Assembly (NCBI GenBank): GCA_946965045.2
Contig: OX337234.1
Location: 310,001-374,000, forward strand
Direction of reading: 5' to 3'
Length of the DNA: 64,000 nucleotides
From: Epithemia pelagica
Taxonomy: Eukaryota; Protista; Bacillariophyta
The first letter of the stretch is position 1, and each line of letters begins with the position of its first letter. The position numbers and the translations under genes are program-made. Below are positions 36,842-44,639 of this stretch, piece after piece. The notes beneath the pieces are model-generated. The model worked only from the letters and a program-made list of their open reading frames with translations. It did not search any database and had not been told where the DNA came from.

Positions 36842-38884
36842 TGGTTTTTTTGGGGAACAGGTCAAAAGGTCGTTTCTCTACGAGAAGCGCTTCCTTTTTT
36901 GTGGCATAAACACACGTTTTGGTGGGTGCACATTGTTCCCTCCAAGGAACAAGATGTGTTAGTGATGTGTTTCGACTGACTGTTTCATTTTCGTTCCTGT
37001 AATCTAATGTTTATGGGTGTTGGCGTGGATTGCGAGTGATTTGTGCTCGTTCTCCATCGAACACAATTCGACCGATCCACATCCATCAGTCAGAAAGGGA
37101 ACGAAAGGAAGCGGTTTCGATGGTTGAGAGGACGCACCTCGACGGATCACAAGAGGTGCTGATTCGGACTGGATCCCAAGCATGCGTTTCATGTGCTAAT
37201 GGATGGATTCCCTTTTTTCGTATAACGCTAGGATGCATTTCTGGCGCGTCGCTTCGAAGTATGATTCTGGGCTGACAATCGATCCTATACATAACGGACT
37301 TCCAATGTCTCTACATATCCACAGCTCGGCCACATCCGAAATCCACCACGGTGGCCACCTCAGCGCCGGCACATACATCTTCTATGTCTGCGTCTTTGGA
37401 CAATCAATCACCACCCCGGCAACCAGCTGCATCTCCACCATCAACTTTACCACTACTCTTGCCCCAAACCAAGAAGCGATTCTTCTTGCGAGCACCACGG
37501 AGACCTGAACCCAAGGCCCTGTCCCAATCCATATTTCCTCCTCCTCCTTTCTTGCCACTGAAATTGGTGCCATCGCCTTTCCAATTCCTTTGCTACAATG
37601 ACCCATCGTCCATACCATTTGTTCAACATCTAGAGAATATGCAATCACAGCTCTCGTCATCATTAGCAATGGTCCGGCAAGCATCCTAGTAGGAATCTAC
37701 CAACCAAGAAGATTCGTCTATGTCCCGTGCAAGGATATTTCTTGGAATGACCTGAGCGCTATACTCTGCAAGACTCTTGTCATTGCAAGGAATAAACTTG
37801 CATGCATCACGTTTCCAAGCACCGTCGAGTGTGTGCTCGCCGAATACTTGTGTGCAATATGGATGACGGAACCACAAAGGACCATTAGCACACGAAAATA
37901 CCTTCTCAAATACAAACGCCTGGTGTAGTATCATCACAGTGCTTGCTACCAGTCAGGGATCTGCCATCCAAATTTCGACCGTCTGTTTCAGAACAACACA
38001 CACTCTCGGTTTACTGCATGGGACGAGGTCTCCACCAATGCCTACCACGCATTGCCGAACGAGCTGCTGGGAACGTTGGCGACTCATGGTATTAAAGAGA
38101 CGCACAACCCAGCCAAGAGTAACAGGGAAACAGGTGGATCCAAGCGACGACTCACCCGGTCCACTTTTCCTGCTGATGGAAATCTTGTTGTCGTCCTTGT
38201 TTCGATGATCGATTTGGGGATGGAAACAAAAGCAGCAGAGTGTCAGGAATGGTTGATGCTTTTCCGCTTTTCTCATCCTCCTCTTGAGAAGAACGGTCAT
38301 TGTTTCCGTTGAAAATTGTAGTGGGTCGCTCGATTCTCGTCTACTGTAGTCTCCAGGGAGCGACGGCTCCAGACAACGGTCATCTTCATGGCCATGTGTG
38401 TTTGTGGTGTCATTGGTGGGAATGACTCCCCATCGAGAGCTATCGTATCTTTGCTGGCCTTTGCATTATTTATATTCTTGCAGTGATTCGAACGTGCGGG
38501 TCCCTGATCGCGCGGGATTTTGGCCTTTTGCCTCTGCTACCCGTGCTACCTTATGTGGTATGATTTTCGTAACGCCATGGCACATTATCAGGAAAAGTTT
38601 GTACCATCCATGAGAGCTGGTTACATGGCACACTTTGTACCCACCTTGGAATGTGGTTGTTTGTATTCAGAATTGGTTTTAACAAGCAAAAGCTATGTTG
38701 TGCCATCCAGGACAGACTACCTCAGAATTTGACAAGTATCTAATGCGACATGCAGCTCTTGTTTTGGAACCTGATTCCTCGTTGTCATAGCGACAGTCAT
38801 GATGCATGCATACCAAATGGTCAGTCATTATTGGAAGGCTTGCGTCGTTTCCTTTGCCTAGGCGAAGGATCCTGGTACGAGGTA

Positions 38885-41800
38885 TCACCTTCGTTGCCCA
38901 AATGACCAAAAAATTATGCAAATGCACCGACGCTCTCGTCTATTTGAGAGGGCGAGGGCGTGTTCCTGATGAATTTTGAAACAAGTGACTGCCTTTTTTG
39001 CAACCACCTTCACGTGACCAACCAACTGTTTGTATCTGGAATCTGTTCCGTTCAAGTCCATAGTAGCAACAACAACAAGACATTCGCTTAGGTCCAGTTC
39101 AAGAAGTCCCACATGAATTATTCCTACCAGTACTTGCCCTGCAACGCTTACCATACACATTTTCGCCAGTGATTTCACAAATTTGCATGGTCGGTAATCG
39201 GGTAGGAAAGAGACAACAGAAATCATCGAGCCACTTCTTGGCGCTTCTAGTGGTAGGTATATCAGTATTGTGCTTTGATGTGTCTGGTATTGATACACTT
39301 GCTGTAGCACGACAAGACGGGAGGACCCAATGACATCCTGGAAAGGCATCCACAATCACTCGACTGACACCCGTCCATGGGCAAACAGTCTCGTTCCGCG
39401 CCAAAGCACACAATAGCTCAGCGATACACCATTTCTTTTGAACATAGTGTGTCGATGTCACACATACCACAACTCGCGCTGTAAGAGCATTCGTCAACAT
39501 GGTAACAAGCGGATCAGACTGTTGTCCAGCATGCATTGTTTTTTCCGCCACAAAGATATTGAGTGTGTTGCCACCACCAGCCGTGTCTTGTAACTGCTGC
39601 TCCAACCTGGTCACATAGTCAAACTCTAGCTCCTTTCGAACTTCCCCCGCAAAGGAAATGAAAACGTGGTATTTTGGTTTTTGGTTTTCAGAAGGCAGCT
39701 TTTTATGCATCATCTTTGCCAAATCGATTCCAAATGTCATTATTTCTTGAAGTTTCTTCAATCTATGCGGATTCAACTGTTTCAGCTCCTCTTTCCTGGA
39801 TGTCATCTGAAGTCGGATCTGGTTGATCCTTCCAAGTGATGCTGATACTTCCAAAAGTCGTTCGCCAAGTTCCACGAAACGCAAAAACATTATCGTTTCC
39901 AACTTGGCGATCAGCGTCACACCATATTGAATGGCCATGTCCAGGGATGTATCCAAACACTGCATATTCTCACCAACTTGAGCATCAACTCTTCCTTCTA
40001 CTTTGACCGCGGCCGTATACGTCGAATCATTCTTAGTCTTAACGATAAGCCTTCCTTCCTGGATGCTTTCCCTGTTCGTGACCGTAGAAGAACCGGCTGT
40101 CAACAACAATGGGAGTTTCCTAAGACCTTGAATCGACGTAGGAGGTTTGTATTCCATCGATTTCCACGTTGGATCAGCATTTGTTAGAGTTTTAACAGCA
40201 TGTGCTCCAAGCTGTAGTTGATCATTGTACCGCATATCCATAGTATGCCAATCAACATTATTCTCCAATGCTTCTAATACCTGTTTCATATCATGGTCAG
40301 TCATGTTGGTATTTCCAACATCAAACTTACGCCAGCGTGAGTTTTCGCGCAGTGCCATGGCCAATCGAATGGCACCTTCATCATGAAGACTGCAATGAGA
40401 AAATCGCAAGTGTTGCCATGACGATGATTCCCCATCATTCAGGGCCTCTGACAAGGTCTTGAGACCACGGTCGGTGATGTGAGTAAAACCAACATCCACT
40501 GTATGCCATTCGCGATCTTCAAGGACAAATGCCAATTTGCTCACTCCTGCATTAGATGTGTCCGTGTTTGCTATGGAAAAGTAAGACCATCTGTCGTTCC
40601 CATCTAGCGCCCGTCCTAATTTCCGTGCTCCGTGTGTACCAATCTTGCTGCGAGACACATTCATACAACGCCAATCACGATTGCTCTTCATACCCTCAAC
40701 CAGCGCCTTGATCCCAGTGTCATCAAGAGCCGTATGTGCCAGATCAAAGATTTGCCATTGATGACTGTTTTGTAACAGGTCCGCAATGACATTGGCTCCG
40801 TCATTCCCAATGTCCAGATGACTCAACGACAAACGAACCCAATGGACATTGCCTTGTCGTCTAGATATAAGAACGGCTAATGGCTTGGAAGCACTGGTGC
40901 TATCAGTGTTCTTAGCTGTTGCACCATCGCCTTGGATTGACTGGATCATTCGAAGGGCTGCTAGAAAAGTCAACCGTGGTGTGTGGTGCAATGAAATGGT
41001 TCGAGGAATGGTAAACGGTCGACCGACGCGGAGTGCACCGTCCGAAGGCAGCATGCACAAATCCATCGATTGCCAGCATTGTCCCAAATACTCTGCCATT
41101 TCAAGGGCATCGGTTGCTTTTTCATGATTTGTGAGGAATAAATTGGAAATGGCATCTGCCGTAACTCCAATTTCGTCCGGATGCTTCTCAAGCAGAAAGG
41201 GTAGGTGGTGAATGGGGTTGACGTAGCCACGCTTGTGCGGAAACCAAAGCTTGTTCGGAAACCAAAGCACCAACGAGTTCCAATGCTTCTCCAACCGTTG
41301 GAGAATGGCTGGACCAATAACCTTGAGCCACGGCCCAATTTCGTCCAATCGTACATGTAAAACAAACCGTTCCCAGCTTGGTGACGTTTTTAGTAGATTG
41401 GCTAGCATTTCCACACCTTGGTCTGGAGTGCCATAAGGGAGACTCAAAGCAATATATTTCCAAGAGGTTTGTCGACGGAGACCCGTGGTCAGTATGTGGA
41501 CATGTTTGGTCTTGTCTAAATCCAGATCAAACACTCGCCAGACACTGTTGCCATGCAGTGATTTGGCAACGGATACCAGTCCTCCATCAAAATCAGATGG
41601 ACATCCATAGCGGAACGTTTCCCAGCATTGATTGCGACGCAAGGCATGTGACAATGCTTCCAATTCACAGTCGTCGATCAGAGCTGGCTCATCAAATAGT
41701 GAGCCCTCAAGTTGGAATGATTTCCATGTTTTGTTGACACTCAAGGCTTCACCCAAGGCTTTGACTCCATTCATAGAAGAAAACCGTACGTACCAGAGCC

Positions 41801-42539
41801 TGAAGTTGGTCCATTGGGTATTTTGCTGCAGTGCTTCTGCCAGTGCTTCGACTCCTTCATCTTCAAGGTTCCTTTCAACAAGCTCCAACTTTTGCCAACC
41901 ATGATTATGGCTCAAAGCGCCAACCAGTGCTTTCCATCCACGCGATCCAAAATTGCATTGCTGAAAAAACAACGTCGCCCAGGACGGATTTGTATTGAGG
42001 GCATTCGCCAACCCAACTGCCATTTCGTCGTCCAGGGCTTTTACGTCCGACAATGTTATGCTGGGATCTGGTGAGGAGGTTTTGACAAATGCACGGGCGA
42101 GTGCTTCAATGCCCACGTCACCAATATTCGTATCGTCGAGCCACAGATAGAACCAATCCACAGTAGCACGTCTTTTGTCCCCAACGTCTCTATCGATATC
42201 CAAATCTAGAATGACTTGCGCTCCTCGATCGGTCACTTGTGTATTGGTCAAGGTTGGCAACGATCGTTCCCCAAAGTGCTTCACCAGTACTCGTTTCATG
42301 ATGAAGCTGATCCGGGTGCCTTTCAATTGATCTGGATCACAGTCGTCCAACAACAAATCGTCGTTCGTGTCATGGTAGTTTTCCGCAATCGAGAGCAAAG
42401 CACTCGCCGTTTCTTCTTCCTCGTTGTTTCCCTGAATCGTGGTTTCCTGGAGAGACATGTGGCGGTCCATTGGCTCGTTGAGGTCGAAAGTCGTCGTTGT
42501 CGTCGTTTTAATGGGGGTATGATGTATGATCCACTTCAT
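38885..42539 (-). CDS. Cytosolic LRR (RNI/NLRC3-like) - helical linker - C-terminal TIR-domain protein; probable join(complement(38885..39042,39152..42539))
   Basis: Two blocks of ~28-residue LRRs (e.g. ALAEALQQNTQWTNFRL, LDDTGIKALVEGMKSNRDWRCM). TIR from ~39670: YHVFISFAGE..IFVAEKTMHAG..VVVCVTSTHYVQKKWCIAELLCAL. GTAAGC donor at 39151 and AACAG acceptor at 39043 would splice in phase 1 onto ORF 38885..39355 (109 bp intron, inferred). Confidence 0.85.
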
Positions 42540-43492
42540 TCATCCACCGCGAGGAGAGCAAAAAAGATCTTTTGTTTGTGCCGCCATTCCACCTCAACGG
42601 GGATCATGTGAGTGGATACAATCTTCTCTATACTGATGTGTATGCGAAGCGCGAGGAAGCCTTTGAGGTCGCAAGTCGCAACCTCTTGCAAGTGGGATCG
42701 GATTCTCAGAAATCCAGTGTCACTTTTGTGTCGTCATCTACAGCATACAATAGAGTTATTTTAACATGCGACACAATACGAGACAGAAAAGAAGAACAGC
42801 AGAACAAAAGAGAACCACCGTGACTGCTCGACGGAACAAACCGTCCTCTCTCATCGTCATGTCTGTGGTCGACGACAATGGACGAAATGGACCGACTGTC
42901 GGTGGGTTCGCGTCCATCTCTCTCAAGTGTTCCACTGTTGGATGCTTTTCAACCACATCAGATGAATTGGGCAACTCTACAGCAATCGTTCCGCCGTCCT
43001 TACCTACATGCTCGTTCGTCTTTACTTGTCGTTGCTTTTAGTAAAAGACTCCGAACGAGGTTCACAGTTTGCATGCACCGTACCAAGCCATGTCAGCAGC
43101 AAATGACCTTGGCGCTTTCTATTGCTGGTGTTCTTCGCGAGAGGCACCACGACACACTCATCTACGACTAGGACGACGCATCCCGAAAATTACACAGTAA
43201 TGGCAGCATGGAACAACAAGAGCAGTGCCAACAAACCTGAAGTTTATTCCGGTATCCAATAACACTTCCACGGTACTCCGAACAAGAATGCGTGATCTTC
43301 TTCATTGCGTGGCTACGGTCACGATTTGTCTCGTGACGAAAGCTCCTAAGGTACCCCTCTTTGGTCCATTTCGTCAAGTCAGTCGTGCTTCCAGTCCGCA
43401 CCCATCAGCATTAGAACAGCAGAGCAAACCTACTTGTCTCTTACAAGACAGTGTCGATCCTCATAAATTTTGCAGTCGAAACGTTTGAACCC

Positions 43493-44639
43493 ATGAGCAT
43501 GACACTGAAAGAACAAGCATGGCAGTCGGGCCTTGTCCTTTTCAACGAGACAGCACAATGGAATGAAAACGACTGGCCTCCTCTTGTGGGAGGAGCGCGC
43601 AATCATCATGCTACGGTCGTACTCGATCATCCTGATAAGGAGAACGACAACAACAACAACAACAACAAGAAACAAACGGTCGTCGTGTTGGGAGGATGGC
43701 AACAAGGTCAAGGCTTTGTCAAATCCGTTATTGTATTAAATTTAGAAGAATCAAACAAGCAGTGGCGAGAAGGGCCACCCATGAACAAGATACGTCGTGG
43801 ACATGCCGCTGTTGTTTGCAATGGAAGTGTCTACGTGATGGGAGGATACAAGATAGAAGGAGGATATTTGGATTGTATCGAACAAATTGATGTCAGTGAA
43901 TTGCTGCAATCATCTTTAACAAACAGCAACACACATGCGAGTAATTGGACGACATTAACTTGTCGATTATCAACGCAGCGATGGGGATGTTGTGCTGTTG
44001 CGGTTCTCAATCGATACATCGTTGTAATGGGTGGACGCAGGAGTGTGCAATACTTGTCGTCGATTGAGATTATTGATACCCGCCACCACGCTGTTATAGC
44101 AGGACCAAGCATGACTGTTCCTCGACAATTCTGTGCCAGTGCGGTCATTGGTCACCGCATTTTTGTCGTTGGAGGAGGCGACAACGAGCATGACAATTTT
44201 GACTCGGTGGAGTATTTGGACTTTGCAATGGACGACAATCTGACTACAGCCATTTCCTTCTCGTCCGCTTGGACCATTCACCCTGATTTGGTACGTTCCG
44301 ACCATCGTTCCTCTTGTACAGTGGTTACCGTGGGATCTTGTCTGGTGGTGCCGGGAGGACGAGGCAATTTTAGTGTGGAAGTCTTGGATACGCACCACAA
44401 CCGTGTGTGGAATCTCCCACCATTCGTGGATTACCGCAGTGGCTGCAGTATGGTGACTGTTGCCAATCATGTTGCCGTGATTGGTGGATGGGACAATCCT
44501 ACCTGTGCGACATTGCCACTAATCGACAAGAATACGTGGTGTTTTTCGTCGACTCTGTGAGCAGCAGCCCAACGGATGGTACCATTTTCGGGAAGCAATG
44601 GTAGTTCGCCCCTCCACCTTGACCTCAAAATCTGAATGA
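43493..44639 (+). CDS. Divergent kelch-repeat protein, array copy 8 (opposite strand; apparent +1 frameshift near C-terminus)
   Basis: MSMTLKEQAWQSGLVLF aligns to the family start MKVQEQALLSGLVF, and six GG-bearing blades follow. The ORF stops at 44560. Removing one T from the T5 run at 44542-44546 restores WCFRRLCEQ (family WLFARLLE) with a stop at 44639. Confidence 0.85.

What the first reader, a model, noticed from the sequence alone, without database searches (positions are those of the whole stretch)
38885..42539. Cytosolic LRR-helical-TIR protein with no NB domain or TM helix, with a putatively catalytic TIR
Seen: two LRR blocks in which the usual N-x-x-L is systematically N-x-x-W (NPSWATL, NHGWQKL, NTQWTNF, NKTWKSF, NRDWRCM, NSRWRKF, NVDWHTM). 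A ~100 aa amphipathic helical segment follows, then a TIR domain retaining the Glu in WCIAEL (39419-39417). No P-loop, signal peptide or TM segment is visible. Established: this Glu is catalytic in NADase TIRs (SARM1, plant and bacterial TIRs). Inference: a receptor-executor fusion resembling a soluble TLR, a candidate innate-immunity protein in an alga. The helical segment might be a four-helix-bundle oligomerisation or cell-death module.
Basis: partly seen in the sequence, partly recalled or inferred. Interest (0 to 1): 0.78.

Follow-up and report, generated by a model that had tools for sequence, protein, structure and literature searches.

The report
Diatom soluble LRR–helix bundle–TIR gene
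This is a real gene in a probable diatom that joins a tryptophan-rich LRR sensor-type domain, through a three-helix bundle, to a plant-like TIR domain with its key glutamate; it belongs to a fast-changing chromosome-end gene family and looks like an innate-immune sensor that lacks the usual ATPase switch, but no activity or expression has been shown.

Summary
A 1146-codon minus-strand ORF (39099-42539) carries about 20 RI-type LRR units that each start with Trp instead of Leu. A three-helix bundle and a TIR domain follow. There is no P-loop, NB-ARC/NACHT, TM helix or signal peptide. The Glu at 39419-39417 aligns with the catalytic Glu of Roq1 and RUN1. Together with the Trp four residues upstream, it is one of only two residues invariant in 33 family members.

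The gene is therefore 42539..39152 plus 39042..38885, 1181 aa.

The helical segment models as a three-helix bundle, not a four-helix one. It resembles no known cell-death domain. It travels with this TIR subtype in many other proteins, including short, ankyrin-fused and reversed LRR forms.

The family has at least 10 copies near chromosome ends, inside very large kelch gene arrays. Some copies are broken. The TIR is under purifying selection (dN/dS 0.2-0.3). LRR block A is nearly neutral (0.7-1.0).

NB-less LRR+TIR proteins are common in bacteria, so this is a new variant of a known kind. Enzyme activity, immune role and expression are untested. Other windows of this scan have already noted copies of this family in the same genome.

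The parts
39152..42539 (-). Exon 1 of the LRR-3-helix-TIR gene (codons 1-1129 plus the first base of codon 1130)
   Evidence: Uninterrupted ORF. The donor G|GTAAG at 39152|39151 is invariant in 13 paralogues.
39043..39151 (-). Intron, 109 nt, GT..AG, phase 1
   Evidence: In the 12 copies where the script found the acceptor, the intron is 83-109 nt long, with lengths that are not multiples of three. Its sequence diverges while the flanking exons stay conserved. A contig of run X4 fits 39152-39453 and leaves the window exactly at 39152.
38885..39042 (-). Exon 2: last TIR helix (alpha-E) plus a tail, with the stop at 38887-38885
   Evidence: The frame is kept in 12 copies, with a shared motif SRY.QLV.HV..VA. 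It aligns to the C-terminal region of Epithemia P0014 at E 8e-4. Matching helices lie contiguous in P0019, P0034, P0036 and P0039.
38898..38925 (-). 28-nt insertion specific to the window allele; it shifts the frame of the C-terminal tail
   Evidence: Absent from the other assembly's allele L001 and from the paralogues. Their tails end ...PRQ(R/K)KRRKPSNND.
42300..42539 (-). Acidic, polar N-terminal region (residues 1-80) with no signal peptide
   Evidence: Sequence and hydropathy; no meaningful Pfam hit.
41355..42299 (-). LRR block A (residues 81-395): RI-type units of about 28 residues, each starting with Trp
   Evidence: dN/dS is 0.69-1.02.
40845..41354 (-). Conserved island (residues 396-565) with irregular W-units and the motifs W.SLVLWFP and MAEYLGQCWQSMD
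   Evidence: It has the second-highest conservation among paralogues (0.74) and invariant residues shared with Epithemia. There is no Pfam hit. Language-model neighbours are RI-type LRR clusters, but the scores are below 0.9, so this is only a lead. This part was not modelled.
40140..40844 (-). LRR block B (residues 566-800), nine W-units
   Evidence: The best PDB sequence matches are NLRP14, NLRP5, ribonuclease inhibitor, NOD2 and DRC5. Some paralogues lack about four of these units.
39990..40139 (-). Variable linker (residues 801-850)
   Evidence: Lowest conservation of any part (0.47). pLDDT was below 50 in model 1.
39702..39989 (-). Three-helix bundle (residues 851-946)
   Evidence: Model m19cfff5800a8 has helices at its residues 2-26, 39-63 and 75-97, with block pLDDT mostly above 90. 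The bundle occurs together with the TIR in about 35 proteins of several architectures.
39152..39677 (-). TIR domain, part encoded by exon 1 (residues 955-1129; beta-A to beta-E)
   Evidence: Pfam TIR 24.9 bits. A family profile matches Roq1 at 6.8e-11, and RUN1, AtTIR and L6 at about 3e-8. VIA Z is 10-12.6. dN/dS is 0.21-0.33.
39417..39419 (-). Codon of Glu1041, the putative catalytic residue
   Evidence: Invariant in 33 family members. It aligns with the Glu of the WCxxEL motif in Roq1 and RUN1 and in RPS4 and AtTIR.
39429..39431 (-). Codon of Trp1037, the only other invariant residue of the family
   Evidence: It aligns with the Trp of WCxxEL in plant TIRs.

Best explanation
The gene encodes a soluble 1181-aa protein with three working parts.

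1. A solenoid of about 20 RI/NLR-type LRR units, in which the first core Leu of every unit is Trp, interrupted by a conserved island.
2. A three-helix bundle.
3. A plant-type TIR domain with an intact Trp/Glu active-site pair.

It is one copy of a diatom family that duplicates, recombines and decays near chromosome ends, inside kelch gene arrays.

Most likely mechanism (inferred): the LRR solenoid holds the C-terminal bundle-TIR module inactive and binds a ligand, either foreign (virus or parasite) or a danger signal. Binding lets the bundle-TIR modules of several molecules associate. This builds the composite TIR active site around Glu1041, which then cleaves NAD+, either depleting it or making a nucleotide signal. 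The outcome would be defence or cell death. No STAND ATPase step is involved. The closest working analogy is SARM1 (repeat domain, oligomerisation domain, TIR).

Shown here: domain composition, fold, gene model, conservation and selection pattern. Inferred: ligand binding, self-association, catalysis and the immune role.
For: Gene and domains.

TIR fold: model 2 has pLDDT 85 and pTM 0.85. TIR domains fill nearly all of the Foldseek top 50 and reach VIA Z 12.6-10, including SARM1 at 11.1 and RPS4 at 10.7.

Catalytic Glu: it aligns with that of Roq1 and RUN1. It and Trp1037 are the only two invariant residues across 33 members that are otherwise 23-80% identical to the window protein.

Selection: purifying selection on the TIR (dN/dS 0.21-0.33) against 0.69-1.02 on LRR block A. 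Repeat number varies between copies.

Modularity: the bundle-TIR module recurs with other N- or C-terminal domains, including ankyrin repeats, TM segments and plant-type LRRs. This fits a common executor joined to exchangeable sensors.

Genomic setting: at least 10 copies within roughly 10-350 kb of contig ends, some with stop codons. This is the usual pattern for receptor families in arms races.

Literature: TIR genes with the conserved Glu are induced in virus-infected and virus-resistant cells of the haptophyte G. huxleyi (PMC12489294).
Against: No biochemical, genetic or expression evidence exists. No sequencing run is on record as RNA.

The beta-strand x positions of the LRR units are not more variable than the rest of the unit. 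The raised dN/dS of block A may therefore reflect relaxed constraint rather than diversifying selection.

This copy carries a tail frameshift, and its other allele has a 5-nt frameshift at about codon 361. Several paralogues are broken. Constraint on any single copy is therefore weak.

Self-association could not be assessed.

Arg34 of the RUN1 SFRG motif is Ala in this family (SFAG; alignment, residue numbering from memory).
Confidence: 0.55

Rival explanations
1. The TIR acts as a non-enzymatic assembly scaffold, as in TLR/MyD88 signalling, and recruits other TIR proteins. This genome has many of them, according to other notes of this scan.
For: The best structural matches by Z are animal adaptor or receptor TIRs: IL-1RAcPb, TIRAP and MyD88 at Z 11.5-12.6. 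The genome holds other TIR architectures (unchecked notes).
Against: Glu1041 and Trp1037 are the only invariant residues in 33 members. That pattern is expected for a catalytic site and not for a docking surface. By sequence the nearest relatives are enzymatic plant and bacterial TIRs: Roq1, RUN1, PdTIR and AbTir.
Confidence: 0.12
2. The protein is an active TIR enzyme with a role outside pathogen defence. Examples are stress- or nutrient-triggered programmed cell death, self/non-self or mating recognition, or NAD+-linked signalling.
For: Nothing ties the gene to infection. The family sits with hundreds of kelch genes of unknown role. SARM1 shows that the same layout can serve metabolic sensing rather than immunity (established knowledge).
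Against: Rapid copy turnover, mosaic recombination and a chromosome-end location are more typical of conflict-driven families. However, allorecognition loci show the same pattern, so the evidence against is weak.
Confidence: 0.2
3. This particular copy is a decaying, non-functional member of a birth-and-death family. The family may work, but this gene does not.
For: A 28-nt insertion shifts the tail frame in the window allele. A 5-nt insertion breaks the other allele at about codon 361. Many paralogues have stops or are fragments. Depth on the gene in the only possibly RNA-like run is low and patchy.
Against: The 1129-codon exon 1 is intact. The tail change lies after the last TIR helix. Comparisons between this copy and its paralogues still give TIR dN/dS of 0.2-0.3. 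A contig of run X4 matches this locus at 301 of 302 bases and leaves it exactly at the donor site, which suggests a spliced transcript of this very gene.
Confidence: 0.13

Closest known systems
Plant TIR-NB-LRR receptors and TIR-only proteins (Roq1, RUN1, RPS4, L6, AtTIR)
   Same: These are the closest TIRs by sequence (profile E 6.8e-11 to 3e-8). They share the motifs FxSFxGE and WCxxEL, including the catalytic Glu. They are intracellular, and in TNLs the TIR is linked to an LRR sensor.
   Different: The domain order is reversed: here the LRR comes first and the TIR last. There is no NB-ARC ATPase. The LRRs are RI/NLR-type with Trp, not plant-type. A three-helix bundle precedes the TIR, and the loop between beta-D and alpha-D is about 30 residues longer.
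SARM1 (ARM-SAM-TIR NADase)
   Same: It shares the working layout: an N-terminal repeat solenoid, a small helical domain, then a C-terminal TIR with the catalytic Glu, and no ATPase. The TIR match is Z 11.1.
   Different: No ARM or SAM domains are detected, and oligomerisation by the three-helix bundle is not shown. This is an analogy, not membership.
Animal Toll-like receptors
   Same: The LRR domain is N-terminal to a C-terminal TIR.
   Different: There is no signal peptide, no TM helix and no LRRNT/LRRCT caps. The LRR class is RI-type, which is intracellular. The TIR is of the enzyme type.
Animal NLRs (NOD2, NLRP5, NLRP14) and ribonuclease inhibitor
   Same: They share the RI-type LRR class of 28-29 residues (E 6e-11 to 5e-8).
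   Different: There is no NACHT domain, and Trp replaces the first core Leu in all 20 recognised units.
Bacterial and archaeal LRR+TIR_2 proteins, and bacterial coiled-coil-TIR proteins (PdTIR, AbTir, TcpB)
   Same: NB-less LRR+TIR architectures exist in many prokaryotic clusters. Bacterial Tcp-type proteins also place a helical region before the TIR. PdTIR is the third-best PDB row, after two entries for Roq1 (5e-9). The PADLOC candidate PDC-S66 matches residues 918-1048.
   Different: The prokaryotic LRRs are LRR_4/LRR_8 type. The atlas scores are below 0.9, so they are leads only. No homology of the helical parts was shown.

Membership tests
TIR domain (Pfam PF01582 / PF13676) | Profile match at or above the curated threshold | tested here: met
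   PF01582 scores 24.9 bits against 21.3. TIR_2 scores 26.1 against 28, just under its threshold. The family profile matches solved TIRs down to 6.8e-11.
TIR domain (Pfam PF01582 / PF13676) | Flavodoxin-like alpha/beta fold with five parallel strands | tested here: met
   Model 2 (pLDDT 85.2) has beta-A to beta-E with alpha-A to alpha-D. VIA Z is 12.6-10 over model residues 105-280. TIRs fill nearly all of the Foldseek top 50, though E-values are only 0.013-0.4. Alpha-E lies in exon 2 and was not modelled.
Enzymatic (NADase-type) TIRs | Catalytic Glu at the start of alpha-C (RUN1 E100, SARM1 E642) | tested here: met
   E1041 aligns with the Glu of WCLEEL in Roq1 and WCLDEL in RUN1 and of RPS4 and AtTIR. 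It is invariant in 33 members.
Enzymatic (NADase-type) TIRs | NAD+ cleavage that depends on self-association | not testable with these tools
   The homodimer prediction gave no answer. An enzyme assay is needed.
RI-type LRR (Pfam LRR_6) | Tandem 28-29-residue units with LxxLxLxxN and an amphipathic helix | tested here: met
   LRR_6 scores 43.8 bits against 23.4. There are 20 units at a period of about 28. PDB matches are RI, NLRP and NOD2. As a variant, position 1 is Trp in all 20 units, and the Asn position is not conserved.
Toll-like receptors | Signal peptide, extracellular LRR and a single TM helix before the TIR | tested here: not met
   No hydrophobic segment is present: the highest 19-residue hydropathy mean is 1.52, and it lies inside the TIR. 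The N-terminus is acidic.
NLR / STAND receptors (plant TNL, animal NLR) | Central NB-ARC or NACHT P-loop NTPase | tested here: not met
   No such hit in Pfam, NCBIfam or PADLOC. No [GA]xxxxGK[ST] motif.
SARM1 family | ARM repeats and tandem SAM domains before the TIR | tested here: not met
   No ARM or SAM hits. The helical part is a three-helix bundle with only generic matches.
HeLo / MLKL / plant CC four-helix-bundle cell-death domains | Four-helix bundle with family-specific sequence or fold similarity | tested here: not met
   The model has three helices. There is no Pfam hit. None of these families appears among the 50 rows listed by VIA, where the helical matches have Z <= 8.7. A missing match is weak evidence.

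The most novel reading that the evidence does not exclude
The Trp-LRR / three-helix bundle / TIR proteins are a class of eukaryotic intracellular immune receptors that work without an ATPase. Ligand binding to the LRR would directly release a bundle-driven TIR assembly that cleaves NAD+. The same bundle-TIR executor would be reused across diatoms behind different sensors (RI-type LRR, ankyrin repeats, membrane-anchored plant-type LRR). The family would diversify together with the neighbouring kelch arrays as one recognition locus.
Probability: 0.25. Interest if true: 0.8.

Novelty: new variant of a known kind. Interest (0 to 1): 0.55.

Why it matters
TIR enzymes are shared immune executors of bacteria, plants and animals, but almost nothing is known about them in diatoms, which are major primary producers with many viruses and parasites. 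A 2025 study of a haptophyte states that TIR-based antiviral systems had not been described in microalgae, and that its TIR genes had no LRR or NBS partners (PMC12489294). An older survey found no effector domain attached to diatom LRR receptors (PMC2939053).

This family provides a directly testable case of a sensor-type LRR fused to a catalytic-type TIR without a STAND ATPase. It raises the question of how TIR assembly is triggered in such a protein. The unbroken Trp ladder in the LRR core is also a structural curiosity.

On the practical side, the public protein models of the family that I examined (P0001-P0005, P0007 and P0008, and the alignment) run into the conserved intron. Their TIR C-termini are therefore wrong.

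Tried and rejected
1. First structure job (10-sequence alignment, residues 805-1129): mean pLDDT was 53, so it was not used. The second job with 33 sequences gave a usable model.

2. Complex prediction on two copies of residues 850-1129: 'no answer', score 0.00, and the alignment was not used. This is not evidence either way.

3. Expression: no run is on record as RNA. X1-X3 behave as DNA. X4 is of unknown type, with patchy depth of 3-25 on the gene and none on exon 2, so expression remains open.

4. I tested whether the X4 contig that ends at the donor site comes from a paralogue. It does not: the nearest fetched paralogue is only 95% identical there, against one mismatch in 302 bases for the contig.

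5. Hypervariable concave LRR face: not seen. The x positions of the strand have identity 0.65-0.72, against 0.49-0.56 in the following loop.

6. Four-helix-bundle or cell-death reading of the helical part: rejected.

7. Word search with the family profile for named short relatives found only 6 proteins and no new names. Cluster look-ups named only Epithemia clementina.

8. Atlas fold search gave only generic TIR clusters with TM below 0.5.

9. Paper searches for a Trp-ladder LRR, or for LRR-TIR proteins in diatoms, found no description.

10. The spliced protein was not joined. The exons were searched and compared by reference only, so the last TIR helix is missing from the model.
Full report
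**What is there**

The window is G000:C7:310001-374000, from a 60.5-Mb assembly of 23 contigs. The minus strand carries one uninterrupted ORF, 39099..42539, of 1146 aa.

Pfam finds RI-type LRRs (LRR_6, 43.8 bits, cut-off 23.4) and a TIR domain (PF01582, 24.9 bits, cut-off 21.3; TIR_2 26.1 against 28). Pfam, NCBIfam and PADLOC give no NB-ARC, NACHT or other NTPase hit. A script found no Walker A motif and no hydrophobic stretch. The highest 19-residue hydropathy mean is 1.52, and it lies inside the TIR core. The N-terminus is acidic.

**The Trp repeats**

In total 20 units of the form W-x-x-h-x-h follow each other at about 28 residues, and they use 20 of the 31 Trp. Trp is the best-conserved position of the unit among paralogues, with pairwise identity 0.93.

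This is a family trait. Six family members, including three from Epithemia clementina, have 18-22 W-units and 0-1 canonical N..L units. Three unrelated RI-type LRR proteins have 0-3 W-units and 7-14 N..L units.

By sequence the LRR part is closest to ribonuclease inhibitor, NLRP14, NLRP5, NOD2, DRC5 and LRRC34, which are all intracellular RI-type LRRs.

Between the two regular blocks lies a strongly conserved island, residues 396-565, with irregular W-units. It has no Pfam hit. I could not model it.

**Gene model**

The donor G|GTAAG is invariant in 13 copies from this genome.
- In the 12 copies where my script found the acceptor, the intron is 83-109 nt, with lengths that are not multiples of three. 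Its sequence diverges while the flanks stay conserved.
- The frame of exon 2 is kept in those 12 copies (SRY.QLV.HV..VA).
- The exon 2 translation aligns with the C-terminal region of an Epithemia homologue (E 8e-4).
- Several distant members carry the matching helix contiguously. ORF-style models of others end in G-K or a similar pair at the same place, which means they read into the same intron.
- The gene is therefore 42539..39152 plus 39042..38885, giving 1181 aa.
The last TIR helix is therefore missing from the model.

**The TIR**

A first model from 10 sequences was poor (pLDDT 53). The exhaustive profile search supplied about 35 relatives that cover both the helical part and the TIR. 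With 33 sequences the model of residues 850-1129 reached pLDDT 85.2 and pTM 0.85.

- Model residues 105-280 match solved TIR domains at VIA Z 12.6-10: IL-1RAcPb, TIRAP, MyD88, SARM1 (11.1), RPS4 (10.7), RPP1 and AtTIR.
- TIRs fill nearly all of the Foldseek top 50, with weak E-values of 0.013-0.4.
- The family profile hits Roq1 at 6.8e-11, PdTIR at 5e-9, RUN1, AtTIR and L6 at about 3e-8, AbTir at 8.5e-7 and SARM1 at 4e-4.
- In these alignments the family's W-x-x-A-E-L lies on WCLEEL of Roq1 and WCLDEL of RUN1. Glu1041 (39419-39417) is therefore the homologue of the catalytic Glu.
- Across the 33 members, which are 23-80% identical to the window protein, Trp1037 and Glu1041 are the only invariant residues.

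**The helical segment**

Residues 851-946 model as three long helices with high confidence. Structural matches are generic three-helix bundles at Z 8.7 or less, which is uninformative for helical folds. There is no Pfam hit.

The segment is a constant companion of this TIR subtype. Profile matches span both parts in short proteins of 230-330 aa. They also do so in an ankyrin-repeat fusion (P0026), in a protein whose hydrophobic N-terminal segments I read by eye (P0024), and in one with a plant-type LRR C-terminal to the TIR (P0036). I read it as part of the executor module, perhaps for assembly or regulation. That role is inferred. The homodimer prediction gave no answer.

**Family and setting**

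The genome holds at least 10 copies, some with stop codons or reduced to fragments. Measured against the contig lengths, the copies on contigs of known length lie roughly 10-350 kb from a contig end.

The same regions hold a very large kelch family, with 935 candidates of which 111 were scored. In three loci, including this one, a kelch gene sits head-to-head about 1 kb upstream of the LRR-TIR gene. Kelch genes are so dense there that this adjacency alone proves little.

Pairwise dN/dS values:

| Part | dN/dS |
|---|---|
| TIR | 0.21-0.33 |
| Three-helix bundle | 0.31-0.53 |
| LRR block B | 0.33-0.50 |
| Island | 0.40-0.50 |
| LRR block A | 0.69-1.02 |

dS differs several-fold between domains of the same pair, which points to gene conversion. 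The copies on C6 and C13 are almost identical (dS 0.003).

The strand x positions are not the most variable part of the LRR unit, so diversifying selection is not demonstrated.

**State of this copy**

Compared with the allele in another public assembly (L001, 98.8% identical), the window has a 28-nt insertion at 38898-38925. It shifts the tail after the last TIR helix and removes the basic ending ...PRQ(R/K)KRRKPSNND that the other allele and most paralogues keep. The other allele in turn has a 5-nt insertion at about 41456 that breaks the frame near codon 361.

**Expression**

No run is on record as RNA. Three runs behave as DNA. A fourth, X4, is of unknown type and covers the gene patchily at depth 3-25. 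It has no depth on the intron or on exon 2.

X4 holds a 315-letter contig that matches 39152-39453 with one mismatch and departs from the window exactly at the donor site. No fetched paralogue is closer than 95% there. This suggests a spliced transcript of this locus but does not prove one.

**Comparison and novelty**

- This is not a TLR: it has no signal peptide or TM helix, and the LRR class is different.
- It is not an NLR: it has no NTPase.
- It is not SARM1-like by descent.
- Its TIR is nearest to plant TNL TIRs, and its LRRs are nearest to animal NLR and RI LRRs.
- NB-less LRR+TIR proteins form many bacterial and some archaeal clusters (scores are only leads). TIR-LRR genes in bacteria are mentioned in PMC7145615. 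The bare architecture is therefore not new.
- New, as far as my searches reach, are the eukaryotic RI-type Trp-LRR, the bundle-TIR module and its spread in diatom-like sequences.
- PMC12489294 reports Glu-bearing TIR genes induced in virus-infected and resistant G. huxleyi, without LRR or NBS partners. It states that TIR-based antiviral systems had not been described in microalgae.
- PMC2939053 found no effector domains on diatom LRR receptors.
- Other windows of this scan had already noted copies of this family and its link with kelch arrays in the same genome. I treated those notes as leads and checked co-location and the intron myself.

**Verdict**

The best reading, at about 0.55, is an ATPase-independent intracellular sensor-executor with a catalytic-type TIR. 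The function is untested, and this copy is mildly damaged.

Noticed in passing
window 19149-63019 and G000 contig ends (C6 0-390 kb, C9 2.73-3.57 Mb, C13 3.07-3.30 Mb, C17 2.97-3.17 Mb, C10, C11, C18): There is a very large family of kelch genes of about 370-410 aa: 935 first-look candidates, of which 111 were scored, at 66-73% identity. They are arrayed near contig ends, in the same regions as the LRR-TIR copies. In the window most kelch ORFs are on the minus strand, but the one next to the LRR-TIR gene (43451-44560) is on the plus strand, head-to-head with it.
   Followed up: partly
L001 about 2948-2952 (equivalent to window about 41456): The allele of this gene in another public assembly has a 5-nt insertion (TATAT) that breaks the frame near codon 361. 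The public gene calls there split it into 343-aa and 769-aa products.
   Followed up: yes
window 38898-38925: A 28-nt insertion is private to the window allele. It removes a conserved basic tail (RKRRK-type, a possible nuclear signal) that is kept in the other allele and in most paralogues.
   Followed up: yes
paralogue pairs win/C6, C10/C17 and C6/C10 (L014-L017): Synonymous divergence differs up to about 70-fold between domains of the same gene pair; for C6 against C10 it is 0.015 in the N-terminus, 0.12 in LRR block A and 1.06 in LRR block B. This indicates mosaic gene conversion between copies. The copies at C6:342 kb and C13:3.117 Mb are nearly identical (dS 0.003), which means a very recent exchange between two chromosome ends.
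   Followed up: partly
public proteins P0001-P0005, P0007 and P0008, and several distant members: The database protein models of this family that I examined read through the conserved phase-1 intron and end in spurious residues after ...NVYG-K. The true last TIR helix is therefore missing from public annotations.
   Followed up: yes
window 38679-38753 and 42513-42675: DNA-like runs X1-X3 hold contigs that skip 73 nt downstream of the gene and 161-168 nt just upstream of its start codon. These are probably indel alleles in the flanks.
   Followed up: no
P0036 (665 aa, unnamed Logan contig): One member of the same bundle-TIR family has plant-type LRRs C-terminal to the TIR, preceded by a hydrophobic stretch (my reading by eye). 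This is the reverse of a Toll-like receptor. Notes from other windows of this scan describe the same kind of gene in this genome.
   Followed up: partly
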